A stretch of DNA of 64,000 nt, taken from NCBI RefSeq assembly GCF_026571515.1, contig NW_026864155.1, forward strand, positions 310,001 to 374,000. Direction: 5' to 3'. Below, in pieces: positions 34,352-58,500 of the stretch; position 1 is the stretch's first letter, and every line of letters starts with the position of its first letter. The position numbers were made by a program, and so were the translations under genes. Under the pieces are notes generated by a model. It saw nothing but the letters and a program-made list of their open reading frames with translations. It searched no databases and was not told the DNA's origin. The DNA is from Ruditapes philippinarum. Lineage: Eukaryota.

Positions 34352-37300
34352 ATGACTTCCAAAACAAAAGGAGGAAAAACATCGACTCCTTCGGAGCATG
34401 ATAAAATGGAGGAAAAGCTCGATGAACAAGAACTGGAATCATTATATGCATGGGTGGATAGTATTCCACTTTCAAGACCAAAACGAAATATTAGCAGGGA
34501 TTTTTCTGACGGAGGTAAATTTATCTTCATATGTATATTTTTCATGATTTTGTGTGAAAAAGAATTATAAAATTTAATATGAAAAAGGCAAAGCCTCAAA
34601 GCGAGCTCGATGTACTTTTTACGTGAAATAGTATGAAATAATCGCTTATTTTTATTTCAAATGCAGTAACGAGTGCGTGTGACGTCACACGTACTGTGTT
34701 AAATATGGCCCCGCCCCTGTCGTGAAATGAATAACGAGTTTTGAAAACGTTGATAAAACTTTGTTTATTTTATTTCACTCTATAATTTTTCAAGCGAAAT
34801 AAAGATTATTTAAAGTGAAATAAATGTAAAACTGAAAACGTTTGCGACATTAAAATAGCGTACTTGATTTGTTTGTTTTGCACGTGCTGTTTGGCGCTAC
34901 ATTGTGACGTCATGTAAACAATACTTTCAACGTCTGTACAGCGTTAACGACTGAATAAAAGATATTGGTGTTCGGATTCATTTTCTTAGTTAGACCATTT
35001 TCTTTCATTCTAGATAGTTTTCACAATAAAATTCGACAAAAAAATTGTTTTTATTTATCAGATTTCAAACAAAATGGCGCCTTCATTTTTCATTTTTTAT
35101 ACACAGCTTCCGTTATTCTGGTTCCCTGCCCAATTATGGTTCCCATAGATGGCGCGGGTGACCAGTCTACACATCCGTTTTCAGTCAGAATTCCTCAGTT
35201 TTTATCGTTATCTTTAAATTCGAAAGGTTGCGATGTGTCCAATTCGGTACTTTGGACGAAAGTTTTCAAAACCATCACTTAACCAGGTACTCGCGTTACC
35301 GTAAAGCTCGCTTTGCGAGCAGGCCCTTCGGGCCAGCTCGTCGAGCTCGCTATAAAGAAATCTAGATTTTGTTATTGAAATGGTCATAAGGCTGAACATT
35401 CTAGATATCTTAATATTAGACTGGTGTTTTCATAAATTTTAAACATGCTCGAAATTTCATCTGCCATAAGGTGTCACCCCATGTGCTCCAAAATGACATA
35501 GTCTGGAAATGACATTAATTTCCTAAATGACATTATTTTCCTTTAGAAATTAATTTACTAAGGTTAACCATTTAAAAATGATAGAATATGGTGTAGAAAA
35601 TGCAAAAAAGTATCTGACATTTGTTTGAAGTTGAGATTGGAATATCCATCCCTTTGGTATCCTGACGTTTGTGGCAACTTGGCAAGCCATGTTATGGGTG
35701 GGTACCAACCATACCATTGTGACATATATTCAGATCCGATCTGCAACACATGATAGATCTGTGTCATTTGTTCATTTGATTGGCTGATGTGTCCAACATT
35801 CAATTTTAATTTATGATACACATAATTATTCTATTTATATAGATACATATTAATTGAAATTCTAAAATTTTGAAATAAGACAGAAAAGCTTCTGAAAATC
35901 TAAATTAACTAAGAAAGACTTTAATGTCAAAATATTTCTTATTCAATAAAACGTGAACTTTGAAAAATAAAAATGTGGCCATGTAGTAGTGATCCTGTTC
36001 ATGATTGACATGACATTTTCTTTGAAATCAGAATTTACAAGCACAATTACTTGTATATAAATGGCTCATTTTATGTTTTTGACAAATGCATTAATAGGTA
36101 TTGACAAAAACATAAATATGACTGTGGTATTGGCATAGGTAATAAGTTAAACCACTTGATTATAGGTCAAGTTTATTTTTGTTTTATTGGAATAGTGATG
36201 GTGCTAGAGATTATAAAGCATTTTACGAAAGAAAAATATACAGGAATGGTATTACCATCTGCAAATAAATTTGAACTTAAAAAGGACAACTGGAAAGAAT
36301 TAAACAGGTATTATATGTATTGACTGTAAGAGTACCATTACAGTCATGGTACTTCAGGTAAAAATCTCCTGATGTTGGAATGAACAATAATTGAACTGTT
36401 CACTTTATAAAATCTGGGTAAATATTAAGATATTCATATATGTCTTTAAATCATCAACTGTAAAATAAAATGATTATTAAAGATCATTGACCTTTATTTT
36501 AGCACTAAGTTTTGGATGAAAAGATCATGAAAATGAAAGAGATAAATACATTGTATATGATATAATGCTCAGATTTTATTTATATGCAACAGTAATGCAT
36601 GGTTTGGCAAAACTTAAAATTTTTAATGTAACTTAAAGGTCTATTCAATCTCCTGAAACCATGGAGATGATGTAAACCTCATACTGAGAGTTAAGCTTTT
36701 AAAAAAAACTTGGTGTTTTGATTGGAAAAAAATAATCATTCAGAATTAATGCTTTAGTGTTTTTTAATAGCATCTGCTGCATGGAACTAAGTTTTGTTTC
36801 AACTATGCATTACTTACATTCAAACAAACAAACTTATAATGCAAGAGAAAGGTTTTACTTGAATGGATTTTTATTAAAATATTTGTCAGTTATGGTTCAT
36901 TTCAATATAGTTTCTGCCTATGAAGTTCTTTGCCAGTTTTTTGAACCCCATTGCTAATCTATTTATAGCATAATAAAAAAATTGCAGTTGAAAAAAATAA
37001 CTGGTGGTTGCATTATATATTTTATTTCATCTATTCTGTCTCGATAAATTCATTCTTTTAATGGCTATAAAATCATCTCATTCGTATATATGTACTCATC
37101 CCATACAATGTCTCAAGTATAACATTGACTTTACCATAAAATAATTTTGAGAATTGCTACTGGGATTATTGTCAACAAACTTTTACAGTCCTTTGAACTT
37201 GATCTTCATAAGACTTAAAGCTTAAGTGGATGAGTACATATAGTAGTATATATATATATATATATATATATATTTTAGAGTAGAAAAACTCTGCTATAAA

Positions 37301-40300
37301 TTTGCCCTATATTTGTGTTGTGTTTTGCAAGTAAAACCTTTCTCTGCTATTCTGTATACATGTGTTACAATTCTTAATAAAATTTCGTCTATGAAAAGAA
37401 GATTTAATTTGTAGATAAAAACAGACAAGAAGTTGCTGCAGAGTTTTCATTTCAGCTTACAAATTTGGTCAGCTAATGATTGGAATTGATATCTTTGATG
37501 CTAGATATATGGAACATTTCCACTTATTTAAATTGTCTACAAATATAGCTTATCCCTTGCTTTTTTTATCCAGAAATTCCCTTGACTGTTCTCAAACTTA
37601 TTCAGTTATAGCAATCGACAGTTGCATAACTGATCTGCTGCTTTGGGTTTGAAGTGTACGCATCATTAGTGTTGGTTTTTAAATAATCTTTTACTTCATG
37701 AAGTAATATAAGTTAGATAGTTGCCTAATAAAATAAAAAACATTAATTCTTGAATTGTTAAAAAACATCTTGTTCAAATACAAAAAATGTAAAAATAATA
37801 ATTTAATATTAACGCACAGTCATGTTTAGTTTAGACTCCAACATTTTTTTTTTTCATGGAATGTGTGGCATATAAACAAACTTCAAGGAGTTTTTTGCAA
37901 GAGTATGAATTAAGAAATTAAAAGTATTATATTTGCCATCAGTTCTGTAAATGCTTAATAACATTTTCTTATACAATTTCTACATACGGATAGAAGGGCA
38001 GACTTTCTTAAATTTTGCACAATTAAAAAGGGTGTTTAAAATGAATTTTAAGGGATTAAAGTGGGGTCACCATCCTACTTATTTATTTATTCAGCCCTGG
38101 AAGTGATTTTTAGGTCATTTTCAAATGCAGAAATCAATCAAGACACATGTTCTTTTTAGGTCTAAACTATAAATGGCTGTGCATATGAAGTATAGATTTC
38201 AACAATTCCTAGCATAGCTTTTAACAAACCTATAAAGCCACATGTCATAGTTTTAAGATGTAAATTGTTTATCATAATTGTGTGATTGAAATTTTTATTG
38301 TCATTTACATATAGAATGAATTATTCTGTCAAGCTTAAGTTCTGATTATAATAAATTATACAGAAAACAAAATATTTTTACAAAATTGTTGACTACTCTT
38401 TTGTAAGAGAGGCTGTAACTTCAAGAATAACTGACATGTGGCTTTTTTTATACATCATCATTCCATGACATTCCAGATAGACAAGCATGATCTTGTGTTT
38501 GTGTTGTACATTTTGTTGCAATCTTTAATGCAAGTACATGTACATAATTATATCTACATGTAAATGTATAGAGCTAATCTTCATTTCCATCTGATAACAG
38601 CATCATTTACCAGTTTAGGTTTTAGTGTTCCAGTGGATATTGGGCTCAGAAACCAGATTAACAAAAAAATCTGAATCATGATTAAGCCATTGAGAGGGTA
38701 AACCTTCTTAATATTTCATTGCACCCTGTACTTTCAGTTCTAGTAGCGGAAATTATGCACCATTTTTTCCCTAAAATGGTTGAAATGCATAACTATTGCC
38801 CAGCTAATTCAACAGGCACAAAACAATGTAACTGGGACCTCCTTAACAGGTATAGTACAAAGAGTTTAGTTTTCAAAGCAAGTTATTACTGGTTCTTCCA
38901 TCTGTGTGTCACAGAAATTCAAAACTCTTCATGTTTGTTTGTTATAGGGCATACAGATGAAATGTTTGTTCCTTGTCTTCGGGATCATTTTCTTTATAGA
39001 AGAATTTGTTTTTTAATAGTTTTACTAGTTATTTATTTTATTACATTTGTATTATTTTGCATTTCATGGTTTTTGCTTGAATGTGGTTATTTTTTTTGTT
39101 CTAATGTCTAGCTCATTTTATTTTTCATTTTGGGTCTGGGGACCAGGGTCTGGGGACCAGAAACAAACATTTTTTGTTGCCTTATTTTTTATCCATCATC
39201 CTTGTTGTTTTTCATCCATCTTCAAAGCATCAATAAATATTGTAAAGAAAGAAGATTGCAATGTCTGGAATTAGTGGTCTGCTAAAAATCACTTAAAATA
39301 ACAATGGACACATCCAGTTTTACAGCAGGGCATCTCCGTTTGAGGGGGTGGGGACAGCAGGGTGGGGATTGTATAAATTGAAATGAAAGTCCTCAGATCT
39401 ATCCAGATATTGTAATTTCTTTGATTTTTACTTTAACTGATCACCATTTTAAGTAGATAGACTAGTTAACTCCTGTTAGTTAAAACAATATATTGGCTTA
39501 AGAAACCTTTTACTAATGATGATTAGTTAAAACAAATTCCTTGACTTCTGATACCTTTTACTAATGACTTTTTGTTAGTTAAAACAATATATATTGGCTT
39601 CTGATACCTTTTACTAATGACTTTTTGTTAGTTAAAACAATATACTGGCTTTAAAAACATTTCACTAACAAGAAAGCCATCAGATGTATTAGTTTAAGTA
39701 CTTAAAACAAAGAGATTATCAGTCTATAAGTGCTTAAATAAATTAAATACACCGAGGCCGATTATCAATTCTATAAATTTCTAAATCAATAACACCTAAA
39801 GATTGTTTCAAGTTCTTAGTAAATTTACCAAGTGCAAGGAGATCTTGTATTTTTGTTTTTTAATTTTTCAAATGTTAGTTAGGGTTGTTAAATTTTAATT
39901 TCTTTTGCATAATTGTGATAGGAGGTTCATGCAAGTTTTACTTTAAAAATTTAACTTGCATTTATGCCGAGGCATATTATGATTATGATTTAAGGATGAC
40001 TTAATTAAGGAAAAATATTTCTACTGTGTCTAAAAACCAATCGCACTCATTATTATTTGAGTTCTTTTTACATAAAAACAATTTAGCCAAGTTTGGCACT
40101 TTTTAACATAAACCAAAGTAATATAATGATAGAAATATTTAACAATTGCATGAACAGCCTTCATCTCATTGCCTTCATCCATTTAAAAAACTCATGCTTT
40201 TGTTCAGCTTATTTCATTCACTCTTTGGGTTCAAAGGTCAGTTATGTTGTGTTCACTTCAGATCCAAAGCAATAGCACCACGATATTTAATCAAGAGTTT

Positions 40301-43300
40301 CAGCCTGTCTTTTTTATCGCTTTAACAGTATAATCATATAGTTCACAAATTTTCTTTTTTATTGAACAGAGTTGAACAGAGGGTTTTTACATTGGCGTTT
40401 TTGTTGATAGTTAGGTCGTCAGAGTGGATGGAGATATTGCAGATTTTTTTGCTAGTGCACTACATGTACATGTAACGTTAGCTCAATAGTTTGGCGTGAC
40501 TCGATTTTTTTTTCCGCATGGTGTTACTCGATTTTTTCAGTGTTAGTGGCTGAATGTGTAAGGCATTTTTTCCCGGATGAAGGCCTTGTTGATTTACACA
40601 ACTATACCACAGCCAACAATACAAACAAAAAAAAGGAAAACTGGTATTACCTGAACAGGTAAAAATGAATAGATGGATTGATTTTATGTTACCATTAACC
40701 TCATAGGTGATTGGATGAAAATTGATGTATTTTTAGTGTTTTTGTGTACAGTTCAAAAGCGTAGATATTTCTCTTTGGTCAGAAAAAAAATATGAATTTA
40801 TATTTATGTACGAAGTAAACAAATTTGTATTTTTTCTTAATTTTTTTAATCTAATCTAATGATAGGAAAAATCGATGAATATTTGATAATATTTTGTGTA
40901 CAGTACTGCAAGCAAATTTGTACGTATTTTGTTTTTCTTTTAAAGTTTGACCATGATTTAAATAGTGTTCAAGGGATGCAGGATTTTTTCCACAAATTTA
41001 ATATTTCTCCATTTTTTTTTGTTTTTGGTATTCAGACCTTTCTTGAAAGGATGCCAATGTAATTTGTTTTCTACCGGTGTTATGCATTTTCTATTAGGTT
41101 CTAGCATTAAAAGGACTGACGTCCAATTTATTTTCTTTTCTTTTTTTAAAATAATTTATTGAAACTTAAAGCACACAATTTGAGATTCGTTTCACATTAA
41201 CTCTTAGCCTGCTGGTAGCATTTATCATACTTTAAAATTCCGCAAATCATGTTGGCCCGTTTTCACCGCTTTTCAAAACTACTGAATTTATATGATCTGT
41301 TAAAAGCTTTAGGTGAAGTATTTCAATTTTATTTACATAAGAACATTTAAAGTGGATGTCAGTATAATGTTTGCAAACCTTAAGATTTCAAACTGAAGAT
41401 TTTAATTGTACATGAGTATGCTATTCAACATACCATATTTAAATCAAATTTAAAATTAATTTATTCTTCATTTTTCTATACATTTGTATACTTTTCACTG
41501 TGCACAAACCATTTTCCATTGTTTTTCAATGGTATTAGCCCTTAAAGTGCTAGAATTGAAAATAAAAAGCCTTGTCACAAGTATAGATTGAGGCATAGTC
41601 GGCAAAATGGTGGGTCTGTACAAATTGGTAGTATCTGACAGGGCTCTGTGTGCTGATATAAATTTTCATCTTGATATCCCTAAAGTATATAATGGACAGG
41701 GCCAAAATTGGATGCTGGGCAATCCATTATAAAATTCAACAGGAAAATGGTTAAATTCACAAACTATTTTGATAGCATATTTAAAAACTACTTTTTCATA
41801 ATAATTACCTTTGTCTTTTTTATCATTCTGTTCTTTCTGTATTTTGTAGAAATTTTTAAAATGTTCATGTTTATGCTTATAACATACGAACTTGCTATTG
41901 AAAGTTTTGAATTTATTTTCTGATTAACAAAAAACAGGGCTTGAATTTGATATTGCATTTTATATATTTATGGGTTCATGCTCTAAGTTAACATATAATT
42001 TACTTGGACCGAAAGTGATTTAAGCTTTTGCCAGCAATATACAAATTGTTAAGGCATGCCAGCCTCCACATAAGTTTTGTCTGACCTGAGGGTCTATAAT
42101 GTTGGCTCTATAAATTTTTTGACATATTCAGTAATTAGCATTATTCTGATTTAATTTTAAAAATGCTGGAACTGAAGGTGAAGGTCACAAGCATTGAATA
42201 CATACAATATGACTGGACTATTCTATTAATTGACTGTTAACTTCATTTTGATAACCCACCATTCTTTTGTACCCTTTTTAAATTTAATTAACATGATACT
42301 CGTAAAAGATATTTTTTTAAAATTCCCTTTTCAAAATTGTAAAGATTGCATGTGTCAAATCAAGTCCTGTTTTTTTTCTTGATTCTAATTAATAAACTAA
42401 TTGTATTTTAAATACTAACTTGAACAGTTTTCTGCTTTTCTGTAAGTGATGTATATATTTATTATTACATTATTACTATATTTTGCTTTTATTATGTTTA
42501 AAATAAAGAAAAAAGATAAATGTTACTATCCATTAGCTCATATGAGCTAAGTTATGAGAACTTAAAAGTTAGTTTTGTATTATTTTTGGTAAATTGTTTA
42601 ACAAATCAAAGAAATGCTTGTATTATTAAAGTTATGTAACATGTATGGTATGTGACAAATATTGGTCTGATTTTCGTGTTTTCTTTCTGCTACAAGTCAA
42701 AAACTTTTTATGGCACAATTAGCAGCCAGTCCATATGCATGAGAAAGAATAAGAGATTGCTCTGTAATTAAAAATGAGGTTTATTGGAGAAAAAAATGAT
42801 TGCTTTAATAATTGTAACTGAAAAGGAGGTTTATTGTAGAAAAATTATCAATAAAATTTTGTTTTTGAATTTTCAGAAAAGTGTTTTCCAAAATGAACTT
42901 TGAGTTAGCCGATGATGTGATAAATGATTTATGTTTATGTAAACCTGGGATGATTGAGAAGGTCTTACTCATGTTACAAGTAAAGATAAAGAGAGCGGAA
43001 TATGCTAGGGCGCGGAACAGCGACAAACCGGAGGCCGATCAACATCATCACCATCATGATCAGAGTAAGTTTTTGTGTGCCAGACTTTGAATTTACAGTA
43101 TATGAAAACAGCTTTTTAACATCAAAAATCTTTAAGAATGATTATTAATTAAGTAAAAAGAAGTCTAATGTTTAGAACTTATTTAATACTGATCCTAAAA
43201 CGTTTCATTCTACTAAGGTTAAAGATAGTACCTGAACTAAACTTAATGCAAATACCAGATTTGGCTGTTTTGTGGTCCAAGAACAACTTAATGGCTGGTG

Positions 43301-46300
43301 ATCTTACCCAGGTTTTATTTTGTGCCTGAATAAATGTGCAGAGTGTCACCAGATGTGTTGCTCCCACAGTATGGCATGAAAGTCTTAATTTTATTGACTT
43401 AACTCAATCTTGGAAACTTGCATTGTAAATATAACAGTTATAAGAAAAAAGTTAATAAAATCACTATTTTTTTTATGATATCTTAAGAAGACAAGGTATG
43501 AAACAATTATTTTCTACCCTTGTCAACAAATGGTGAATAATTTTATTGAATATAAAAATTTTAATATTTTTTCCCAACAATTCTTTCCAGTATGATAACA
43601 TTATAGAAACGCAGTTTACATTCTATTTGCTTGTATATCAGTTATTGTACATAACATTGTAACTTGTATATAATAGGAACTGTATTTATAGCATGTTATT
43701 CCCTTGTGGCCTTTTTCGTACTGAATAATGAACAATCTTAAACAAACATAGTCTGCCAATTTGAATAAAATTTTGTTTGCTGTTTTATATAGATGGTTAT
43801 TTCAAAAGAAGGTTATGCTTAAAATAATCTTTATAGCTGATTTATATGATTTTGATACTATTCCCAGATAAAAAATAAATTATTAAAATATTTAGAAAAA
43901 GATATTATTTCAAGATACCATCTTAATTAAAAGTGTTTTTAATTAAAAGTGATATAGGACTGTTTATTTTGATAAAAAAAAATTCCATGAAACAAAAATA
44001 GCAAGAACTGTGTGACTTATTTTAAGCATCACATAAAGAAATTGTTACAGATAATTGCATTTTCAAGTTTTATTTTTATATAATGTATGAACTTATGAGT
44101 GTTTACTAAATAAACTAGTTTTGATACTTATGCTGAAAAGTATTTTAAACTCTTCCTTTTATAGTCACTGACGTATAAGTACTTTTAAGTTTGAAAACAT
44201 CACCTTAACTCATAGTGAAAGGGCCTTGTTACTTGATGTATTAGTGAACAGACTTAGGATCACTTGCACCTTACGACTGCAGGTTCAATCCTGCCAGAGA
44301 CCTTTGATTTCTCTTACTGTGAGGAAACTATCCCAATAATTAGCTAAAAAAACGTCAGTGGTTCTACACGGGGTCTGTACTCTCAGTGCCTGAAAAGGCA
44401 GATGGACCTTATTAAACTTAGAACAGGCACAGTGGAATTCCTTAAATAATCCAGGAACATCTGAGGTCTTTCTCCATCATCAAACAAGCTGGAAAGTTAC
44501 CATACAACCTTTATGGTGTTGATTTGACTTAAAAAACCAACAATCTAATATGTGTAGTAATGTGAGTGAAAAAGAAATAATTTTATATTCTTCCAGTGAC
44601 ACCAGGTAGAAAAGGCATGGTTAAAGTTGGTCTTGAAGACACCAAGGGAAGCAGATTTCAAAAAACAAAACAGTGAGTATATATTTAATACAGAGCCAAA
44701 AATGTGGTTTCTTTACATAACTTCTTATTTAGTGCTTTAGAAAGTGTTATGGAAAGTTATAGAAGGTATTATGAAATAAGTGTTGTTTCAAGCGATACAG
44801 TGAGTTTCCTAGATGTGTTACTGTTTTGTTTTTACCCATACACCACCTATAATGTGTATTGAACTTATGTCCCACTTTGAATTTGCAAAATCATTACTAT
44901 TTGTAGGGCACTTATTTTCATGGTTTTCATGAACATGACAATTCATGAGAGTCATTTAAAGACCCATTGAAATTTCATTTTGTCTGCTGTAAGATTATTT
45001 TGCGTCACATTTATTTTTTGCACAAATAGACAATCAATGAATATAATGCCCATGAAAATGCCCTTTTTGACAAAACCACAAAATTTTATGACCACGAAAT
45101 TAAATTAACTCTCAGAATATGGCTCCTGATGAAGAAATTTTTGATATTTTACTAAAATTATCTGTTACTGATCATTTTCTACAGAGACATGGAGAGGCTG
45201 TAAGTGTATTTATGTTACATCAATGACTTGTTGTCAACCTAACTGTCAGTACTTTGATAATTGTTTAACAATTGTATAGATTTTTTCTTTTTATGAAATG
45301 TTTTATTTGCTTTTTAAATTAGAATATCTTAAGAAACCTTAAGGTTATGTTTGTTACCACACAGACTCAGTTTTGAAATGTAGATGAATTTTTTTTTAAG
45401 AATTTTATTTTACTTAGAACACGTAGATAAAAAAATTCACTACTGATTGAAATCAGGAACATGAATGGCTTTAAACTGATAACTTAGACAAAATTAAGTT
45501 TTTATGACAGAATGAGGAAAAAAATGAAATTTCTTCTGTTTTCTTGTGTATTTCATTATTTAATATTTTTCTGTGGCCATCTCTATGGCTGCAATTTTGG
45601 AAATCATCAATTATTTGATATATTTTTACATCTTTATAAATTATAGTCATATTTGTAACTGATACTAATTTGATACTTTTTTTAAGATTTTTATGCAATA
45701 TTTACATTCTTAAGGTAAAAGCAAAGTACGAAAAAATTATATTTCTATAGTAATAATATTGTTAAATGAAAGAATTCTTCTTTAAAATATGGTACTTTTA
45801 CTTTAACAACAGTTACATAGAATTTCCAATGTAAGTGTGCGTTAGTCAGTTTTTTGTTTCTCGTCTAAAATCCTAATTCTGGGCCTGGTTACTGGTACAA
45901 TATTCTATTAATTCCTTCCAATTAACTTACCAATTAATATAGATACTGTACAGTGGGTAATATTTGCGGATGTTTCATTTTCGCTTTTCGGTTTTCAATC
46001 AACCTTGAATTCAAATCTTCCACGAATATTTGCCACTTACGCAACAGGCATATCCATATAAAAAAATGTAAAAAATAAAAAACTCTAGTAATGTCTATAT
46101 AAATCAACAGTGATTAGAAAAAAGACATAATGGACACTTGCAATGGTTTTCGCATGAGGTTATTGTGAGTGAATATTTGGTGAACAATGTTCATAATAAT
46201 CGGCTTTCGTTTTCAAACACTGATTGTTAACTTTCATATACAGACGTTCCGTAAAACAGTTCAACACGGAAAGTCGCAAGTTTTATGCCAGCGTTATCCA

Positions 46301-46553
46301 TTTTGATCGTCGTGAAAACTACAGTGGCTGCTTCTAAACTTAACATCACGAATATATCGAATTTTAGAATTCAGTACTCCGCAAATTTAAAACACGGCAA
46401 ATAAGTTCATTAAAAAAAAAAAACACGAAAATTAGTCCCCGCAAATTAGCCCGCTGTACAGTAGATGTATAATATTTTTTAAATTGTTTCATATGGCCTA
46501 GATTATTAGCTCGACTATTCGCAGAATAATCGAGCTAATGCAGTCACCCATTT

Positions 46554-46592
<39 letters not shown>

Positions 46593-49500
46593 CCTGTGGT
46601 TAAGTTTTTGTATGTAAGCTGGTATCTCCATAACTACTGAAGGGAATGGATTGAAACTTCACACACTTGTTCTCTGTGATTATCTAAGATGATTGGCACA
46701 AGTCCCATAACTCTGAATTGTTTTATTTCATAATTATGCCCCTTTTTCGACTTAGAAAATCTTGGTTAAGTTTTTGTATGTAAGCTGGTATCTCCATAAC
46801 TACTGAAGGGAATGGATTGAAACTTCACACACTTGTTCTCTGTGATTATCTAAGATGATTGGCACAAGTCCCATAACTCTGATTTGCTTTTTTTCATAAT
46901 TATGCCCTTTTGACTTAGAAATTCTTGGTTAAGTTTTTGTATGTAAGCTGGTATCTCCATAACTACTGAAGGGAATGGATTGAAACTTCACACACTTGTT
47001 CTCTGTGATTATCTAAGATGATTGGCACAAGTCCCATAACTCTGGTTTGCTTTTTTTCATAATTATGCCCCTTTTTCGACTTAGAAATTCTTAGTTAAGT
47101 TTTGTGTATGTAAGCTGTTATCTCCATAACTACTGAAGGGAATTGATTGAAACTTCACACACTTGTTCTCTGTGTTTATCTAAGACAATTGGCACAAGTA
47201 CCAATAACTCTGATTTTCTTTTTTACATAATTATGCCCTTTTTCGACTTAGAAATTCTTGGTTAAGTTTTTGTCGTGTAAGCTGGTATCTCCATAACTAC
47301 TGAAGGGAATGGATTGAAACTTCACACACTTGTTCTCTGTGATTATCTAAGATAATTGGCACAAGTCCCATAACTCTGATTTGCTTTTTTACATAATTAT
47401 GCCCCTTTTTTGACTTAGAAATTCTTGGTTAAGTTTTTGCGTGTAAGCTGGTATCTCCATAACTACTGAAGGGAATGGATTGAAACTTCACACACTTGGT
47501 CTCTGTGATTATCTAAGGTGATTGGTACAAGTCCCATAACTCTGAATTGTTTTATTTCATAATTATGCCCCTTTTTCGACTTAGAAAATCTTGGATTAGT
47601 TTTTGTATGTAAGCTTGTATCTCCATAACTACTGAAGGGAATGTATTGAAACTTGAAGAGTTTGTACCTTTTCGGACAATTTTATGTATTCATAGGTAAG
47701 CATTATTATACTCAATGAAACACCCTTGTGACAAATTTTCGAATAGTCGAGCTTTACTGTCCTCCGACAGTTCTTGTTTTATATGTTGAATAATTTTTTT
47801 TTTAAATAATTTTTTTAGTCCATGTTATTGTATAAAATATGATATAAATATTTTTTGTACTTGTATTTTGGGAAGTGTTGTATGATAATGTTAAGAAACA
47901 AACTCCTACAAAAGACTAATTTTATGATGTACTATAGTGTCCAGAGTGCATTTGCAGATTGGCCAAATTTTATATGACTTGCAGAGGCTTTGTTTTGTTT
48001 TGGTTTTAATGGTTTGAAAATTTGCAGGCAAGCAATTATAGAGCCTTTTGTAAGTCTAGATGACTTTCACAGAATGGTCAAACTCTATACTACTTTTTAA
48101 TTTTGGTTTGAGCATTGTAATGATTCAAAATTAGAAATTATTTAGTGAGAGATTTAGTATCTTATGTTGAAAAGGTATCAAAAAGACACTGATAGTATGT
48201 AAGTATCACTGTATGAAGTTGACCCTGACTAAATTTGAAGTGTTTCCAAGAACCTAAATTACATGTTGGTTTTCTTGTGTATGTCGGCTATTATTGTTTG
48301 ATAAGATTTTTTCATATTTACCTCCCTTTGACAAGATTTTGTCATAAAACATTATTTACCTCCCTTTATTTTAATAGGATTTTGTCATAAACATAATTAC
48401 CTCCCTTTATAACTTTCAGTAGGTAGCAGAAAAGCAGTTTAAAGTGAAAGATTTTTTAACCTTCGTCTTGATTGAGATTTTTTATGCCTTTTTCCTCTGT
48501 AAACTCATTGAAGGTGCTATTAGTCAGTTGTTATAAATGAAAGGAGATCAAAAGTCACAAGGCTGTCATGCACTTTGTAGGATTTTTGTTTTTGCTTTTT
48601 TTATCCTTTCTATATATTTTTGTATGTGTCTTTTAAATTATGTTAACAGTAGTTGGCGTGCTGAAAATATTGGTGAATAGTTTACTTAAATTTACTAAGT
48701 AATTGACTGGACATATAATTATGTCGGTTTCAAAAAAAAATCAAGAAGTACTTAATTTCTGTTAGCCTAGAGTTCTTCAAAAACCCAGTGCCTATAACAC
48801 TCCATATGTAATATATAAACGTCATTTTTCATCCTAATTAATGCCATTGTTCATCCTGACTCTTTCCCATATTAAATGTTATTTTTGTAAGAAAAATATG
48901 TAAACTTAACATAAGTGTTTTACATAATTATATATTATAATATATATATTTAGCACAATAACAAAATCGAGATTGGATCTCAACGCTCCATTAAAGCGTA
49001 TAAAGTAAGTACGTGGTGATTTCACTGCTATATCTAGTTGTTGGCCAGTTGTCATTCACGTACCTCATAAAGGAGTATTGAAATATTGTAGCGTAAGAAA
49101 TTTAGAAAACTAAACTATTCGTTCATTCACTTTTTTTTTTGTGTGATTCATTAGGAGAACTGATTTATTGTAGCATAAGAAATTGTAGACAACAAAACTA
49201 TTCGTTCACTTTTCATTTTGTGTGATTCATTAGGAGAACTGAAGTATTGTAGTGTAATAAATATAGAAAAAGAAACTATTCATTCACCTTAGACTGCGTG
49301 TGAGATGCTTATTTTTCGGAAAAAAATATAGAGTAAAATCCTGGAGAAAATAAAGAGTAAAATCTTTTCATTTGAGGAGAATGTGACGTTAGTTAAAGGA
49401 AAGTCTGTTTCAGTCGTGTGTTAGTCTTTGTCTCAAAAAATATGCAGACAGCATCTTATGTGAGGATCTTTCTCCACCAGTAAAAGGATGAAAAGTTGTT

Positions 49501-52500
49501 CATATGTTCTTTATATGTTACCTAAAAACCCGTTAGACAATGATGATTAAATACATGTATGTGTATGGATAACAACTTTAATCATTTAAAACTTTTAGTT
49601 AATCATTGTCCTTGGTGAAGGTCATATTTTTTATTACCATGTACATGTTTATATATAATATATATTGTTTCATAATCTTTTTCTGCTAATGTTTGATACA
49701 AATGTATTTCATAAATGTTTAAGGTATTGTCAGCATATTTCAAGTTGGTAGGTTTTGTTTCATATTTACAGAGAAAAACAGATAACATTCGAACCAAAAA
49801 GGAATCTTGTAAAATTTAAGGAAAATTTCAGTGGAAACAATGAAAAAGGCCAAAGGTACTTTGATGGGGTTATGTGAAAATGACGTATTTATATAAAAGT
49901 TGTTTTATATACATAGCTTGAAAATTCAGATGTTCACAAATATATATACTTTGTTTTGTTCACATGCTTTATAAGCCTTTAGCCCATGCTGCAAGTGGCA
50001 TCTGCCCATGAATCCAGTGCTGACCAAAATCAGCCGACACCTACATGCCATTTGATCATGTTCTGCACTGTTCACTACATTGTATTCAGTCAGTACTTAT
50101 TTTGAAATTTTCCCAAAAATTGATATTATTAAGTTATTTTGTCGAGATTGAAATATATAGACATTCAAGTCTAATAATTTAAAGGGATTTAGCATGGTAA
50201 AAGTTTAACTATTAAGATTAATTTAAAGCAGGTTTTATGGCCCAGTACAAACAGTTGAATGCAGAGACTGGAGGAGTCATGTGACAACCATTTATACACA
50301 GCCATATTATCTGATGAAAGTCCTTATTAGGAATTTTGTAATACTGTATAATAGTTTTACTTTATTAGTTTTAATTTATTCAAATACTTTATGAATTTGT
50401 TGAAGCAAACTGTATAGAACATATACTGTGTCAGTGTGCATAGATAATTTAAAAACTCGTGATTGCCTAAGAAAATTGGCATAATATAAAACAAGACTAG
50501 TTTTAAAATAAATTACTGCAGTCATATTAATGTGATGGAAATTTTCGAAAGCACCTAAACATGTAGATATTTCACCTTCACAATATATGTTTGTGTAGAA
50601 TTGAATTTAAATGCTCGCTTACATGTATGTGTGTTCACAATTGGCTTTCTTGGACTACATTTACAGCCTATTATCAGAGTCTGAACAAATTGTATGATAT
50701 ATCATCATGTAATATGAATGTATGCCTTAACAATTATGTCAATTTTTTTTTATCAAGACAAAATAATGTTACCTTGATATAATTGATAATACATTATTTA
50801 GATATCATATATCATAATTTCTGTGGAGCAGTGACCTAGTGGTTAAGGGGTTTGCCTCTCAACCAACCAGGGATCATGGGTTCGAGCCCTACTCGGGGTG
50901 AAGACCATTTTGCTTCATATGACACCAGTACTGGTAGCAGACTCAAAAATGATCGATAGAAGTTGCAAGAACTTTTTTTCGTAATCTGAAGCTTAAATAA
51001 ATATGTTTAAACTAAACAAATTTCTATGAATTAAATCATTTTAATTTTCTTGTCATATTAATACATTATATGTCATAGGTTTGACATGATTCCACATCAG
51101 CTTTTTCTTTAACCTTTTCCACCCTAAACTTAACCTTTCCACCCTAAATTTATCAAGTGGACATGTCCTACTTTTATTTTGGGACAGACCATTTTTCTTG
51201 TGAGGGATTTTGATATCAGAATGCTAAAATTAAGTAGTATAGAGCCTGGTCAGATGGCTTTGAAGGTAAGACAAATTGGCAAATTCAAAGAAAAACTGCA
51301 CCATTAATATGTAGAGAAATGACAGTTTTGCATTGAATTCCCAAGTTTTGTTATAGAAAATTGGAGTTATTATGGCATAAAAGACCAAAAGATTTCACCT
51401 TGTTAAATGGAAAATGTTTTGTTTTTTTCTGACCAGAAAATACTGTTGTTTTTTACTTTTGTCATAGTTTTTAATTTTTGACCTTGTTTTTCATGTTTGA
51501 CCTAGATTTTCATTTTTGACCTTATTTTCTAACTTTTGTCCAAGTTTTTTTTTTTTAATATTGAACACAGTTTTTTAATTTCTGACCTTGTTTTTATCTT
51601 TAATTTAGTGGTCATGAATACTACAAGTACCTTTCGTAAGTAGTTATATTCAACACTGAACACAAAGCTGTTTGTACAGCACAGTTCTTCTGTTTCTTTG
51701 CATTACATTTAATTCACTGAAAACGGAGAGATTTAGTACCAGGGTTGCCATTTTGACCATTTCTCTAGTACACCAGTCAATTGTAGTGCCGGCCCCTAAA
51801 TCTCAGGTGGGGGGGTGGGGTGAAGGACTGCAGCTGCATTTCCAGGCCCCCCAAGGTGAAAACTTGCAGGACCTGGTCTTACCAAAGGTTAGGTAATCTA
51901 AAAGTCAAAGTTCCTACTACTTAAGAAGTATTCCTCAGTGGTTTGGAGGCTTAAGGTTTACAATTGACTGAACTGTATGTAACAGTATGTTGAACTGTAT
52001 GTAAGTTCATGTTTTTCATTATGATATTTCTTCATTTTCTGAAACTAGATGAAATTAATTTTCAAAGGTTCAGGCCATATTCAAAGCTGAAATATTACAA
52101 AATTATGGCTCCTGTATGTCAATTGGGTAACTGCTTTTATATAATACATGTGCAAAGTCTAATCTGTTAATTTATTACCTAAAATCTTCTGTTTTTTTTC
52201 CAAACTTCTTTTTTTTTTTAATGAAAATACTTTCACTATTCTACTACTCTGGTAAACAGGGTTGTTTTTTTCCACCTATTAATAACAGCTAAGAACTCTA
52301 GAAATTCAAAATAAGGTCATTAAACGAACAAATTTCTAGTTGTCTGGAACACTTGAAATCTAATAAAGTATAAGTGAAGCATTAATTTTAATAGTGCCCC
52401 TAGCCCGGAAGCAACAGATCGCAACTTTTATCATGAGGGTAAATAGAAGCACCTCATGATTAATCAAATTTTCTCATCATGAGTGTACACTGTGCATAAG

Positions 52501-55500
52501 TTATTTTTCAAATAGGTGTCACATTGGTTGCATAGCATGTTTTGCTATTGAATGCTTTTTCAAACTTCTAGAAAACTTTACAAAAATTTGGTTATGCAGG
52601 CAAACTATTTGTTTGACAATTAAACAACCAAAAAAATATGTATGATCAAATTTTAGCATTTATATTGATTTTAATCTTTAATTTTAGTTTTGATAATAAC
52701 AGACATTTGGTCTGATTAAATCAAATTGGTTACGAGACCTGAGCTCAGAATTTGCTTCATGCAATCTCAGATGGTCTTGTAACAGATGCAAAGCTTACTT
52801 ATTTATCCTATGCATTTGAAATTAGTTTTTTTTGCAGTAATTTACAAATTTTTCTAAAAAAAAATAATACTGGGAAGTAACATAGAATTTTTTTTTTTTA
52901 AATTGTGCATACATGTATATATATATATTTTTTATAATTATGTATTGTATAGTTGATGAACATGATTTCAGGGTGGACGACTATGGTCATGTAATCACCC
53001 ATCGTTACCTTGACAACAGGGGATGGAACTCTGGGTACTATATGACACTCTGGGACTTACGTTTTATATTATGTTTACAAACTTGGATTTCCTTGAAAAG
53101 TTTTAAAATTGTGCTTAATATTATAAAACAGCAGTTTCAAAATACACACAGAGATAGCTGTGACTTTGCTGATTGTATGTTTACGTTCTTTGAAATTCAG
53201 TGTAGATTGCCTTTTTGGAAATTTATTATGTTTTCTACGAAAAGGAGCAATTTTATTACATGTTTACAAGTAGATACTTGCATTCACATGTATATGTTGT
53301 TTTTATCAGACTTTTTGAAAGAGTTTTGAGTGGCTAGATAGATTGATTATGAGATTTATTTGTGAAAAAAAAATTTTTTTGACACTACATTATTCTTTTC
53401 AAGGAAGTCGAGGTTTGTTTTTTTTAATGACAGAATAATGAAGGTTTCACTTGTTGATAGAAAGAGAATTAAGTAGCTTTTTTGATAAAAATTTTAGAGT
53501 TTAAAATTGTTTCTTTTTGCATTGCCTCATTGTTTCGCCTATGAAATTCAGTGGAATTACCTTTTACATTTATTTATAAAATGCTCATATTAAAATTATT
53601 CTTTTACAATACCTTGTTTTGCCAATGAAATTCAGTGGAATTATCTTTTACTTTTGATGTATTATCTACTGAGATTGTTGTTCTTATAGAAAAAAAAAAA
53701 AAAAAAAATAAATTAACAATTAAAGTCTATAGGCTATTGATTTAAAGAACAATGAAAATACTAGCCCATTGTTTGTGTATTAAATTTTCTATAATCATCT
53801 TTAATTTTGTTGGTAACATTAAAAATTTTCAGATAAATATATTGTAGAATTATTATAATATATAAACAGGAAATATAGCATTGCCTAAAATAATAAGGAA
53901 AATGATAAACAAAATACTGACATAAAAAGTTAAAGTTCACTTTCAGGGCCGGCAAAATCTGATTTTGACTTACTTGTCGGTTTTTATGTGAAGCATTTTT
54001 TAACTTGTCCATATGATATTGACATACATTTGTAGTTAATTCTTGAATATTTTCACTTGTCCATACAGGCTGTGGGACAACCTGGGCAATACAAACAATT
54101 GATTTTGCCGCCCCTGACTTTTCTTTTCTAATTTTGCTTTTTAAATGCGGAAAACAAAAATTAAATTTACCGGTAATTCAAATATAATTATCCTGAATTA
54201 TCATTAAATGGGTGGTTCTACGGTATGTACATGTATGTACATGATATACACTTATTAACAATTGGAGCTTTATGTACGCCATTTAATAGCAAGTGAAACC
54301 TTCCCACTTTTCTAGGTGTTTTATGTTTTTTGTGTGCACTTTCATGTTTTCTGTGCTAGATATCATGAAGAATATTTTGCTGAAGTGTGGTGTTTGTTGG
54401 AGTGAAGATGGTGTTTGATTTAAAACATAATATGAGCCGCGTCACGACAAAACCAACATAATGCGTTTGCGAGCAGCATGGATCCAGACCAGCCTGCGAA
54501 TCCGCGCAGTCTGATCAGGATCCATGCTGTTCGCTATCAGTTTCTTTACTTGTTATAGGGTCTGTAAGCGAACAGCATGGATCCTGATCAGACTGCGCGG
54601 ATGCGCAGGCTGGTCTGGATCCATGCTTAGGTCGCAAAGCCATTATGTTGGTTTTGTCGTGACGCGGCTCAATTATTGTAATGTTGTGCTATAGAAACAA
54701 TATTTGAGATTATCACATGATACTGTTGGTTCTCAATGAATATTAAAATTATTTGTTCCTTTATATTTTAACAAATTTGACATAAATATGGCCCATCAAA
54801 GGTGTTTTAGTGGGGTTTTCATTTCCCCCATTTTCTGGCTGTATAAAATCATGTGATGAAATAGAATCTTACATTTGCTATAATTTCATTAAGACTTACA
54901 TGTATATTAAACTGTTCTCTGGAATATTTATACATGTATATACCTGGGCACAGGCTTACTTATAAATTTTTTTTATCCTAGAATTGTTTTAATTGTATCA
55001 GTTTAAGTTGATTAAGAAATGACAACATTTGTAAGATTCTATGTATATACATGTAGCTATGCTTTCTGTATGTCTACATGTACATATAACCCTGATAATT
55101 GGTATTATAATTGAAAATTCCTTAATTAATATTATGCTGTATGTTTGTATAATTATAATTAACTTTACTTTAAAGGCCCATTAATTAAGCCTCAAAAAAT
55201 GGTATCATTTGTATTTTTCAAAAAATTTTTTACGTGTGTCCTTTTAAAGTTTTCAAAGTGATATACATTGGCCATATACCTGAAAACATCTTTCCCTTTG
55301 GGTTCTGGCAATAAGTAAAGTTATAGTTAATTAGTATTTTGTATGGCAGCCCATTGCTTACATTTTGCTACATATATCACAAAATTAATGGCTATAAATC
55401 TTAAGTTGCACATTCTAAACCCATAATTATTTAAACATTATAAAACACAATCATGTTTGCCTTTTCTATGCAGAACAAAATCCTTTCATTTTTGTGACAT

Positions 55501-58500
55501 AATGTGCCTTTAAAATGTGCCTTTTTGTTTTGTTTTACAGATTGATGTTGATCATGATGTATTTTTTAAGGGCTTATATACTTACTGTGATATGAGTTTA
55601 TTATGGTACTTGGAGAAAAACAAACAATAATCTTTTTACTTGTATTTCAAAACTTTTACAAGTGTGTTCAGTACATGATTCTGAAAACAGTATTTAATTT
55701 TGTTGTTAAACAAGAACATCACATGTGGTTATAGCGCTTGTTTGTTAAAAATTCTAAGTTAAAAGAGGCATACCGGTAAGTCAAAAAATATCTTTCTGTT
55801 TTTTTACCTTCAGAAATTAGTTTTTTGGTCGAAAAATTGCGAAATTTTGCACCTTGTTCATGAAAAAGCAAAAAGGTTTGGGTTTTTTAATGTTGATAAC
55901 ATTGAAATGTTTCAATGATCGGCTACATTGAAGTGTTTTCATTATGATGACGACAATGAGTTACTGACGCTGCAGGAATTGTAATTGCTTGACTTTTTCT
56001 TCAAAACAGACTAACTAAAAATGAAAATGACATTTTGCTAATTTTTTGGCTGTCAACATCATTCTGTTGAGCTTTAAGTTAGCTATAAATTTCAAAAGCC
56101 TTTATAGCCGATCAATATCATGGTGATTGAACAGTAATTGTTCATGATAAATGTTTAAAAACATGTACAAATGATTGCAACACTCTGTATATCATTGAAT
56201 GTTACCGATAAATTTCAAAGAATTTCCATGAGTCACACAAGTTGCAAAGGCAAAATGTAAAGTTATTCTGACTTTAACCTGTACACTAACCATTTATAAT
56301 TAGAAAGGCACATAATGCCAATTCAATCATTTTTACATTTTTAACACTACAAGGAAATACTGTTTTCAGAATCATATTGATACTGAGTATTAAATTATTA
56401 TGATAGTATGATTGCTTTTGTTTTAAATATCTCAGTACAAATGAGGTATAATTTATAAAAAAAAAATGTGAGATAAAGCTAGAGTTATTTACATAATGTT
56501 TTAATTGGATGTCATTTTCAGATTGTTTTGTTAGCATTATAGTACAGAATATAATTTATTTTATTAATAAACTTGATGATGAGAAAAACAACACTGAATT
56601 TGATTGGCTGTTTCAGATTTTTGAAATTTTAATTTGACCAATAGCTAAGTAGCACAATGTAGACTGTTCTAATATTTCAGATATGTGTAAATTGAAACCA
56701 TAAGATGAAAATGCTGTGTAAAATTTTACTGTAATTATTGTTGTCTCTGTTCTTGTGTTTGTAATCGTATTGTTGTTGTTGTTATTGTTGCGCTAACTTA
56801 GAAAGTATTTTACAGATTACATGAGCAAAAGGCTCCGCCAAAACCTGCTATAAAGCAACAAACTATACAAAAGAAACGGCCAGGTCAGGTGGTCGAGTCC
56901 GATATGGTGCCGAGGTACGTCGTTGAAGAGAAGGAACAGGAAGTGCTATCACGTGACGAAACTATACAAGTAAGTCAGAGTGCCACCTATCCCGAATTAA
57001 TATTCTCTTAAATTTTTAACATTGCAGAGTGGAGCATATTCCACCTCGTCAGAGAAATAAAATACTGGAAGGCGATTTGGTCCCGCGTATTTTGTTAGAA
57101 GAGCGGGAACAAGAAGTCCTTGCTAAGGATGAAATGGTCAAGGTCAGTGGCTACAGTGTCCACACATTAGTAGCACGTTTTGTGTGTGGCAAAATTTACA
57201 ATTGTTGTGGAGTGTTTTAGCTCAGTGCTAGCTGCAATTGTTTTGTTAGTTTTGTAATTTGTATACAATTATATATTTTTACACTTATTCTGAAAATTGC
57301 CACATTAAAAGATATCATTTCAAAATTAAAGAAAAAATTGCCATGTAGAATGTCTTTTCTCTATCATTTTTTGCTTGAAGCCAAATGTTTTTGTAAAATT
57401 TTGTAATCTTTGGTTTAAACAATATTCATTTCTTTTTGCATATTTTCAAACAAAATTTCAATATATAAATTGCATCGAGGATTGAGTAGAAAGCTTAACG
57501 CTTATTTGATTTTAACTCTCTCCTGTTTTGTAATCTTTGATCATTATCAATAAAAAGAATGAAATTTAAAGGGGGCCCCATTTAATGTGGCAACTTTCAT
57601 GTTTCTCAGGTTTAGACTTGGGCAAGGATTTTTTATCATGCATATACAGTCAAACCTGTGCTAAAGACCACTTTCAGAGTTATTACCCTTACCTATAAAA
57701 TGGACTTCTCCTGCTTTGAATTTGGGACTGTCCATTATAAAAATGAGGGATTTTTATATCAAAATAATATCTAATTAAGGCAGTAGAGGGCCTCAGGTCA
57801 GATGGCAGAAAAAATTTTCCCTTTAGCAAATACAATATTTGCCATGGCAACTTCTGGTACACATCATATAGTTAACAATGAAGGCATTTGAATGTGTTTG
57901 TTCAACAGCGCATTAATATTTCATTTAAATTCGCTGTCCATGTCATTAAAATGTATTTTAAGGAAGAACCTTAGTTAAAGAAACTGTCCGGTTAGCTCAA
58001 TAGGTAGAGCTCTGATTATTTGGGTTTGATTCCTGGACAGTGCAGGTCACTTTCTTTGTGATTGATCATGAAATCCTTTCTACATGTTCTACGGTCATTT
58101 ACACTGTACCTCTGCTCTGGCATGTACAGAAATTATCAGTATCTTGCAAAAGTGAAGGCAACTAGTACTGGTGAACTGCTTGATAGCCTGTCCAGGATCG
58201 ATTCGGTGACTGAACTGTGCCCTGGTATTTAAATTCAATTTGGTTTACTCCTGTGATCCAGAGTGAAAACTTCAAAACTACCAACACCACACCATTTTTA
58301 TAAACGCAAAAATATTCACTTTTGTAGTGAGGAAGTTATAATATAGTTCCACATATAACCTGTATATATATCTTCTATAAGGTTTTCAATGTTGGCCTTT
58401 TCTGCAGGTTTCACTGGTTAGGTTTAGTTTAAACAATATTTTATTAATAATCCACACATTTACATAATAAATTACATAAAATAAAATTTACGGATTGAGT

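What the first reader, a model, noticed from the sequence alone, without database searches (positions are those of the whole stretch)
44597..56816. Array of frame-symmetric micro/cassette exons giving a combinatorial SPEF1 linker
Seen: between a phase-2 donor (44672) and phase-2 acceptors (56816/57028) lie six AG..GT-bounded segments of 15, 18, 51, 84, 27 and 63 nt (45185, 45813, 48954, 49772, 51609, 52972). All are multiples of 3 and open in the phase-2 frame, and four have a perfect GTAAGT donor. The split-codon ends (CA, CT, AT, AA, AG, TC, GG) never begin TA or TG, so no skipping combination creates a junction stop. Inference: a tunable linker adding 0-86 aa between the microtubule-binding CH domain and the coiled coil. 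That would give up to 64 combinations, or 128 with the alternative exon pair, and could set cross-linking spacing or phosphorylation sites (e.g. GHEYYKYL). Standard gene predictors would likely miss these exons.
Basis: partly seen in the sequence, partly recalled or inferred. Interest (0 to 1): 0.8.

Follow-up and report, generated by a model that had tools for sequence, protein, structure and literature searches.

The report
Clam SPEF1 cassette micro-exon array
The six tiny segments are real alternative exons of the Manila clam SPEF1 gene, already in the public RefSeq annotation, that add short peptides to the flexible linker of a cilia microtubule-binding protein; this is a tidy but not new case of combinatorial splicing.

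Summary
The window is Ruditapes philippinarum (Manila clam) and the gene is "sperm flagellar protein 1-like".

Counting alone does not lift them above chance. The 12.1-kb interval holds 414 open AG..GT segments of 3n length on the + strand and 407 on the - strand.

RefSeq nevertheless lists 46 protein isoforms (X1-X46), and every one of the six cassettes occurs in some of them.

Homologous cassettes occur in other heterodont bivalves. The 63-nt exon is 95% identical in Mercenaria and Dreissena. The 24-, 15- and 51-nt exons have homologues in relatives, two in assembled transcripts.

The 34 annotated linker forms are exactly all paths through a 30-junction graph. The five middle cassettes are never joined to each other, and the largest annotated insert is 43 aa, not 86.

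So the exons are real and variably used, but free 64/128-fold mixing is not shown. "Predictors would miss them" is wrong.

The cassettes sit in the disordered region just before the coiled coil. AlphaFold suggests the 63-nt cassette docks on the CH domain.

The parts
34352..34514 (+). Exon 1 coding part (start codon as in RefSeq isoforms); start of the CH_2 domain
   Evidence: tblastn of P0001 at 100% identity; Pfam CH_2; boundaries
36196..36307 (+). Exon 2, version a (isoform X3 only); mutually exclusive with the next two
38738..38849 (+). Exon 2, version b (isoforms X2, X46)
   Evidence: Pfam CH_2 E 9e-11
40541..40658 (+). Exon 2, version c (all other isoforms)
42877..43064 (+). Exon 3: end of the CH domain and start of the disordered region
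44597..44672 (+). Exon 4, constitutive; ends with two bases of a split codon (phase-2 donor)
45185..45199 (+). Cassette c15 (15 nt), in 25 of 46 RefSeq isoforms
   Evidence: homologue in a related clam's transcript contig P0096; single copy in the genome
45813..45830 (+). Cassette c18 (18 nt), in 5 isoforms; no homologue found elsewhere
   Evidence: single copy
48175..48198 (+).
   Evidence: Homologues in Mercenaria isoforms. Two Logan transcript contigs (P0094 and P0239) differ only by it. Single copy
48954..49004 (+). Cassette c51 (51 nt), in 12 isoforms
   Evidence: homologue in the Mactra protein P0107
49772..49855 (+). Cassette c84 (84 nt), in 5 isoforms; found only in this species
   Evidence: a targeted search found only R. 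philippinarum proteins; single copy
51609..51635 (+). Cassette c27 (27 nt), in 5 isoforms
   Evidence: only weak similarity to a Mercenaria 18-nt cassette and to the start of oyster exon 5; single copy
52972..53034 (+). Cassette c63 (63 nt), in 19 isoforms; the best conserved cassette
   Evidence: 95% identity to Mercenaria and Dreissena, 80% to Mactra, 67% to Mya; the only confident island in the linker in AlphaFold models; single copy
56816..56969 (+). Exon 5a: end of the linker and first half of the coiled coil; mutually exclusive with 5b
   Evidence: including both would shift the frame
57028..57142 (+). Exon 5b, the alternative to 5a
62653..62766 (+). Proximal last exon (canonical SPEF1 C-terminus, stop at 62764-62766). 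The alternative distal last exon lies 474-773 nt beyond the window end

Best explanation
What it is: the six segments are genuine alternatively spliced cassette exons of the Manila clam SPEF1-like gene. They belong to an array of seven cassettes (15, 18, 24, 51, 84, 27 and 63 nt). The array lies between constitutive exon 4 and a mutually exclusive exon pair (5a/5b).

How it works: all cassettes are multiples of 3 and share the same split-codon phase, so any subset keeps the frame. They add 5-43 residues (annotated forms) to the intrinsically disordered region, about seven residues before the coiled-coil dimerisation helix of a protein whose CH domain binds the microtubule seam.

Annotated junction grammar: c15 is optional; then at most one of c18/c24/c51/c84/c27; then c63 is optional; then 5a or 5b. 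That gives 34 linker forms. Three versions of exon 2 and two last exons add further variety.

Shown: the exons exist, preserve the frame, are in RefSeq, and are partly conserved across heterodont bivalves.

Inferred: the variants tune the reach, solubility or valency of the SPEF1 dimer. The 63-nt cassette adds a conserved motif that docks back on the CH domain.
For: - Identity of the gene: CH_2 domain exons. The protein representative P0001 matches the window exons at 100% and is XP_060565501.1, sperm flagellar protein 1-like isoform X22 of R. philippinarum. It lies on a 548,059-bp contig, the same length as the window's contig.
- RefSeq isoforms: 46 were recovered and decoded, and each of the six cassettes plus c24 is present in 5-25 of them.
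- Conservation of c63: 95% identical in Mercenaria and Dreissena, 80% in Mactra, 67% in Mya.
- Conservation of the others: c24 has homologues in Mercenaria, and two Logan transcript contigs differ only by it. c15+c24 occur in another transcript contig. c51 has a homologue in Mactra.
- Related architectures: Mercenaria has 23 isoforms, Mya 16 and Dreissena 8, with the same layout. Oyster transcript contigs exist with and without a cassette at the same site.
- Not exonised repeats: six cassettes are single copy, and c51 was not tested.
- Position in the protein: solved structures cover the CH domain (residues 18-142) and the coiled coil (188-249) of isoform X45. The insertion point is about residue 181. 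AlphaFold gives pLDDT below 50 across the linker.
- Function of SPEF1: CH domain + IDR + parallel coiled-coil dimer that bundles microtubules, and deleting the IDR makes the protein aggregate (10.1101/2025.07.31.667833). The CH domain binds the seam every 8 nm, and a dimer could sit on one microtubule or bridge C1 and C2 about 8 nm apart (PMC11642885).
Against: - I obtained no read-level RNA evidence in this species.
- RefSeq XP_ isoforms are computed models. The 34 linker forms equal all paths of the junction graph, so individual full-length combinations are not demonstrated.
- c18 and c84 have no homologue in any other species searched. They could be low-level, lineage-specific splicing.
- Sequence statistics alone do not separate the six from hundreds of chance candidates.
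- The functional reading (reach, valency, docking) rests on literature about other species and on AlphaFold models with shallow alignment depth over the cassettes.
Confidence: 0.85

Rival explanations
1. The exons are real, but much of the apparent diversity is noise plus enumeration by the annotation pipeline. Only the conserved cassettes (c63, c24, c15, c51) matter. c18, c84 and perhaps c27 are young, rarely included exons without function.
For: - The 34 annotated linker forms are exactly all paths of a 30-junction graph. Mercenaria and Dreissena sets are likewise complete enumerations.
- c84 was found only in R. philippinarum, and c18 has no homologue.
- Each of c18, c84 and c27 occurs in only 5 of 46 models.
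Against: - c18, c84 and c27 have good acceptors, and c18 and c27 have perfect donors.
- None lies in a repeat.
- All keep the frame and stay open, which noise exons need not do.
- Inclusion levels are unknown.
Confidence: 0.3
2. The cassettes act mainly as discrete interaction motifs, not as length spacers. In particular c63 folds back on the CH domain and changes microtubule binding or fixes the geometry between head and coiled coil.
For: - c63 is at least as conserved as neighbouring constitutive exons. Against Mya it is 64% identical, compared with 54% for exon 4 and 61% for exon 5b. It is 95% identical to Dreissena and Mercenaria.
- In two AlphaFold models (clam X38 and Dreissena X3) it is the only confident island in the linker, with pLDDT about 80.
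- Each model has only two 3-residue strands: one in c63 and one at conserved CH-domain residues just after helix 4. They must therefore pair with each other.
Against: - The two models share most of their alignment, so they are not independent.
- I could not inspect coordinates or predicted aligned error.
- The other cassettes are predicted disordered.
Confidence: 0.3
3. The segments are chance AG..GT-bounded open stretches in an AT-rich intron, and the models containing them are artefacts.
For: There are 414 such segments on the + strand against 407 on the - strand, no excess of 3n lengths, and 8 GTAAGT on + against 6 on -.
Against: - All six are in RefSeq isoforms.
- Four of the seven cassettes have clear homologues at the same place in the protein in other genera, two of them in assembled transcripts.
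Confidence: 0.03
4. The five middle cassettes are a regulated mutually exclusive cluster, chosen by competing RNA pairing between one docking site and selector sequences, as in Dscam.
For: In the annotated junction graph, c18, c24, c51, c84 and c27 are never joined to each other.
Against: - No k-mer (7-10 nt) upstream of the cassettes is complementary to the intron after exon 4 or after c15 beyond what random positions give.
- In Mercenaria two neighbouring middle cassettes are joined in annotated isoforms.
- Low inclusion of each cassette would give the same picture.
Confidence: 0.04

Closest known systems
Fast skeletal troponin T (TNNT3): alternatively spliced small exons 4-8 in the N-terminal variable region (PMC2447309 abstract; Breitbart et al. 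1985, listed in its references). That these give up to 64 isoforms together with a mutually exclusive exon pair is from my own knowledge.
   Same: A run of very small, frame-preserving cassette exons in a flexible region. It is combined with a mutually exclusive exon pair further down, giving dozens of isoforms from one gene.
   Different: A different protein and organelle (a cilia microtubule binder, not the thin filament). Here the annotated junctions allow only restricted combinations. In addition, the gene has three alternative exons inside its folded domain and two alternative last exons.
SPEF1/CLAMP of mammals and Tetrahymena (CH domain + disordered region + coiled-coil dimer; binds the microtubule seam and bundles microtubules)
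   Same: - Same family by Pfam CH_2.
- CH fold matches 9nw3 at 0.9 A and 9ntm at 2.0 A.
- The coiled coil matches the Spef1-CC crystal chain 9ijx.
- Same domain order.
   Different: No comparable isoform diversity is described for SPEF1 in the papers I could search. The clam gene varies the linker, part of the tubulin-contacting helix and both halves of the coiled coil.
Bilaterian neural micro-exon programme (SRRM4/eMIC-dependent, 3-27 nt exons with a UGC motif near the acceptor; own knowledge)
   Same: Four cassettes are 15-27 nt, frame-preserving and lie in a protein-interaction or disordered region.
   Different: There is no TGC within 40 nt upstream of any cassette that could be examined. 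The gene is ciliary, not neuronal. Three cassettes are 51-84 nt.
Dscam / myosin heavy chain type mutually exclusive exon clusters
   Same: Exon 2 (three versions) and exon 5 (two versions) are duplicated, mutually exclusive exons. The middle cassettes are never joined to each other in the annotation.
   Different: The cassettes are unrelated in sequence and length, so they are not duplicates. They can all be skipped. No docking/selector complementarity was found.

Membership tests
SPEF1/CLAMP family | N-terminal CH_2 (PF06294) calponin-homology-like domain | tested here: met
   Exon-by-exon Pfam hits covering profile positions 1-25, 25-62 and 60-95. Genome scan. The AlphaFold model matches SPEF1 CH structures 9nw3, 2ee7 and 9ntm.
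SPEF1/CLAMP family | C-terminal coiled-coil dimerisation helix homologous to Spef1-CC | tested here: met
   Isoform X45 residues 188-249 match crystal chain 9ijx_A at E 3.5e-12. A long helix is predicted with pLDDT above 90.
SPEF1/CLAMP family | Binds and bundles microtubules; localises to the ciliary central pair | not testable with these tools
   Known for mouse and Tetrahymena only.
Frame-preserving cassette exons | AG acceptor, GT donor, length a multiple of 3, open in frame, same phase at both ends | tested here: met
   Direct reading for all seven cassettes.
Frame-preserving cassette exons | Both inclusion and skipping occur in transcripts | tested here: inconclusive
   RefSeq isoforms show both for every cassette. 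Transcript contigs of relatives show both for the c24 homologue.
Micro-exons (27 nt or less, the common definition) | Exon length at most 27 nt | tested here: met
   c15, c18, c24 and c27 qualify. c51, c63 and c84 are small cassette exons, not micro-exons in the strict sense.
Troponin-T-like free combinatorial array | Neighbouring cassettes included independently of each other | tested here: not met
   In the annotated junction graph the five middle cassettes are never joined to each other. c15-c27, c18-c63, c84-c63 and c51-5a junctions are also absent. The result is 34 forms, not 128 or 256. This may reflect detection limits.
Dscam-like mutually exclusive cluster | Docking site complementary to selector sequences upstream of each variant | tested here: not met
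   The k-mer complementarity test gave no more than random positions. The 36 nt upstream of c51 were left out.
SRRM4/eMIC-type micro-exons | UGC motif close upstream of the 3' splice site | tested here: not met
   The nearest upstream TGC lies 66 nt or more from every cassette examined. c51's immediate upstream was not examined.

The most novel reading that the evidence does not exclude
Heterodont bivalves run SPEF1 as a modular isoform code. This would use three alternative tubulin-contacting helices, a cassette array in the linker, two alternative acidic halves of the coiled coil and two alternative basic halves, giving up to about 200 proteins.

Different cilia types (gill, sperm, larval velum) would then get different seam-binding cross-linkers. 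The conserved 63-nt cassette would act as a switch that docks the linker onto the CH domain.
Probability: 0.15. Interest if true: 0.55.

Novelty: already known. Interest (0 to 1): 0.3.

Why it matters
SPEF1 stabilises the seam of the ciliary central-pair microtubules and works as a dimer. How far apart and how rigidly its two heads are held is set by the region these cassettes alter.

Bivalves depend on several very different kinds of motile cilia. A gene that varies the linker, the tubulin-contact helix and both halves of the dimerisation helix is therefore a natural system for asking how one microtubule cross-linker is adapted to different axonemes.

The exons themselves are already in RefSeq, so the value lies in the functional question, not in the discovery of exons. 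I found no paper describing this isoform diversity.

Tried and rejected
- Chance model. Counts of open 3n AG..GT segments, GTAAGT donors and 3n excess are the same on both strands. The statistic alone supports nothing, and the decision came from outside evidence.
Local scripts left them out, and genome searches were placed beside them.
- The typed protein query was an unchanged part of stored RefSeq protein P0202.
I therefore could not fetch the Mercenaria, Mya or Dreissena loci or inspect the transcript contigs.
- The search for short same-species transcript fragments found only genomic read-through ORFs.
- The docking/selector RNA-pairing test was negative.
- Rbfox, PTB, CELF, QKI and UGC motifs are not enriched near the cassettes.
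- Origin of the cassettes from repeats was rejected for six of the seven. The only large repeat in the interval, 46502-47782, holds no cassette.
I stopped that step and used the identities already given.
Window exons were searched one at a time, and whole proteins used were public ones returned by the tools.


Full report
**What the window is.** The region is AT-rich (about 30% G+C) and belongs to a 1.4-Gb assembly, contig C12642, 548,059 bp. A CH_2 (PF06294) exon lies at window 38737-38850. Exon-by-exon Pfam scans place profile positions 1-25, 25-62 and 60-95 on open frames at about 34.4 kb, 38.7/40.5 kb and 42.9 kb. A search of 1.84 billion protein representatives with the exon-3 open frame alone returned P0001 (342 aa, 98% identity). 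Its exons match the window at 100%. It is XP_060565501.1, [quoted passage not shown], on a contig of the same length as the window's. So the window is Manila clam and the gene is its SPEF1 orthologue.

**Gene model.**
- Exon 1: 34352-34514.
- Exon 2 in three mutually exclusive versions: 36196-36307, 38738-38849, 40541-40658.
- Exon 3: 42877-43064.
- Exon 4: 44597-44672, which ends on two bases of a codon.
- Exon 5a (56816-56969) or 5b (57028-57142). Both take one base and end in phase 0, so including both shifts the frame.
- A proximal last exon at 62653-62766, or a distal one 474-773 nt beyond the window end (L005:474-773).

**The observation.** As a statistic it is not above chance:
- The 12,143-nt interval has 414 AG..GT segments of 9-150 nt that are multiples of 3 and open in the required frame on the + strand, against 407 on the - strand.
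- It has 8 GTAAGT on + and 6 on -.

Sequence counting therefore cannot decide the matter.

**What decides it.** A homology search with P0001 plus two cluster look-ups recovered all 46 RefSeq isoforms X1-X46 of this gene. The counts are c15 in 25, c18 in 5, c51 in 12, c84 in 5, c27 in 5 and c63 in 19. There is also a seventh cassette of 24 nt, in 9 isoforms, which I located at 48175-48198. It has a GTAAGT donor but a purine-rich, weak acceptor.

**How combinatorial is it?** From the 46 proteins I rebuilt the junction graph. It has 30 distinct junctions and 34 distinct paths from exon 4 to 5a/5b, and these 34 are exactly all paths that the graph allows. Two things follow.

First, the isoform list looks like a complete enumeration from junction-level evidence. 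It does not prove that each full-length combination exists.

Second, the graph is restricted:
- c15 is optional.
- The five middle cassettes are never joined to one another.
- c63 is optional after c15, c24, c51 and c27, or directly after exon 4.
- c15-c27, c18-c63, c84-c63 and c51-5a junctions are absent.

The largest annotated insert is 15+51+63 nt = 43 aa, not the 86 aa of all six together. With three versions of exon 2 and two last exons, the ceiling implied by the annotation is about 200 proteins.

**Is the "at most one middle cassette" rule regulated?** I cannot tell whether it reflects regulation or low inclusion of each cassette. A test for Dscam-like docking/selector complementarity was negative. 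In Mercenaria two neighbouring middle cassettes are joined.

**Independent support from relatives.**
- Mercenaria mercenaria (23 isoforms), Mya arenaria (16) and Dreissena polymorpha (8) have the same architecture. The Mercenaria and Mya sets also show three exon-2 versions and two last exons.
- c63 is 95% identical in Mercenaria and Dreissena, 80% in Mactra and 67% in Mya. It maps back to 52970-53035 with E about 1e-13 in a search of the interval.
- Against Mya, c63 is at least as conserved as constitutive exon 4 and exon 5b: 64% against 54% and 61%.
- c24 has homologues in Mercenaria. Two Logan assemblies of about 2.2 kb (P0094, 264 aa; P0239, 272 aa) differ only by this cassette. A full-length open reading frame on a 2-kb contig must be spliced RNA, because the gene spans over 30 kb. 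That is an inference, since I could not inspect the contigs.
- Another such contig (P0096) carries homologues of c15 and c24 together.
- c51 has a homologue in Mactra.
- c27 shows only weak similarity to a Mercenaria 18-nt cassette and to the start of oyster exon 5.
- c18 has no homologue. A targeted search on c84 returned only R. philippinarum proteins.
- Oysters, mussels and Lingula have other cassettes at the same site. Some appear in transcript assemblies with and without the cassette.
- Six of the seven cassettes are single copy in the genome; c51 was not tested. The only big repeat of the interval (46502-47782, very high copy) holds none.

**Where the cassettes act.** Solved structures cover the CH domain (isoform X45 residues 18-142; 2ee7, 9ntm, 9nw3) and the coiled coil (188-249; 9ijx). 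The insertion point is about residue 181. AlphaFold models of clam X38 (c15+c51+c63) and Dreissena X3 (c63) give a confident CH domain and a long C-terminal helix, with a linker at pLDDT below 50. The exception is a 12-15-residue island inside c63 at pLDDT about 80. In both models the only two beta segments are three residues in c63 and three conserved residues of the CH domain just after helix 4. They must therefore pair with each other. The CH part of the model superposes on seam-bound SPEF1 at 0.9 A.

**Published work on SPEF1.**
- It is a CH domain + IDR + parallel coiled-coil dimer about 8 nm long. It bundles microtubules and phase-separates, and deleting the IDR makes the protein aggregate (10.1101/2025.07.31.667833).
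- Its CH domain binds the seam every 8 nm. A dimer could sit on one microtubule or bridge C1 and C2 about 8 nm apart (PMC11642885).
- Tubulin contacts listed there include helix 4. Helix 4 is encoded by the thrice-duplicated exon 2.

**Most likely mechanism.** The shown part is a conserved, frame-neutral cassette array that changes the length and composition of the disordered tether next to the dimerisation helix. The inferred part has two elements. Most cassettes alter reach, solubility or multivalency of the dimer. c63 is a specific motif that docks on the CH domain. Known splicing-regulator motifs (Rbfox, PTB, CELF, UGC near the acceptor) are not enriched, so the regulators are unknown.

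**Limits.**
I have no read-level evidence for this species.
- I did not search with a joined model of the window's exons.

**Verdict.** The feature is already in public annotation, although I found no paper on it. It is an ordinary kind of thing, a troponin-T-like small-exon array, in an interesting protein.

Noticed in passing
window 36196-36307, 38738-38849, 40541-40658: Exon 2 exists in three mutually exclusive, equally phased versions (112, 112 and 118 nt). The triplet is conserved in Mercenaria and Mya isoforms. It encodes CH-domain helix 4, which contacts alpha-tubulin in Tetrahymena SPEF1A, so the isoforms may differ in seam binding.
   Followed up: partly
window 62653-62766 and L005:474-773 (474-773 nt beyond the window end): There are two alternative last exons. 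The proximal one gives the canonical SPEF1 C-terminus. The distal one gives a diverged second half of the coiled coil plus a His/Gln/Ala-rich tail of about 70 residues. The same choice is annotated in Mercenaria and Mya.
   Followed up: partly
window 52972-53034 (protein level): AlphaFold places the 63-nt cassette as a short strand plus helix (pLDDT about 80), paired with a conserved 3-residue strand of the CH domain. This holds in the clam and in Dreissena isoforms. The rest of the linker is predicted disordered.
   Followed up: partly
window 46502-47782: A very high-copy dispersed repeat (over 12,000 first-look candidates, copies 93-97% identical) with an internal array of 166-bp tandem units (46597-47654). 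It sits inside the cassette-bearing interval but holds no cassette.
   Followed up: partly
window 61733-62226: A 33-bp tandem repeat of about 15 copies, open in several frames, about 430 nt upstream of the proximal last exon.
   Followed up: no
window 51813-51893: An open stretch with weak similarity to the c63-end/exon-5a junction region of the Mya, Mactra and Mercenaria proteins (E 0.07-1.3). It is possibly a decayed exon copy, or chance.
   Followed up: no
window 48050, 52001, 55776: Three further GTAAGT sites in the interval do not correspond to any annotated exon. I did not test whether any marks an additional rare cassette.
   Followed up: no
protein P0104 (Mya arenaria GenBank model 'SPEF1-like protein'): This non-RefSeq model strings the 5a-type and 5b-type exons together in one protein. 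That shows how the duplicated exons mislead some predictors.
   Followed up: no
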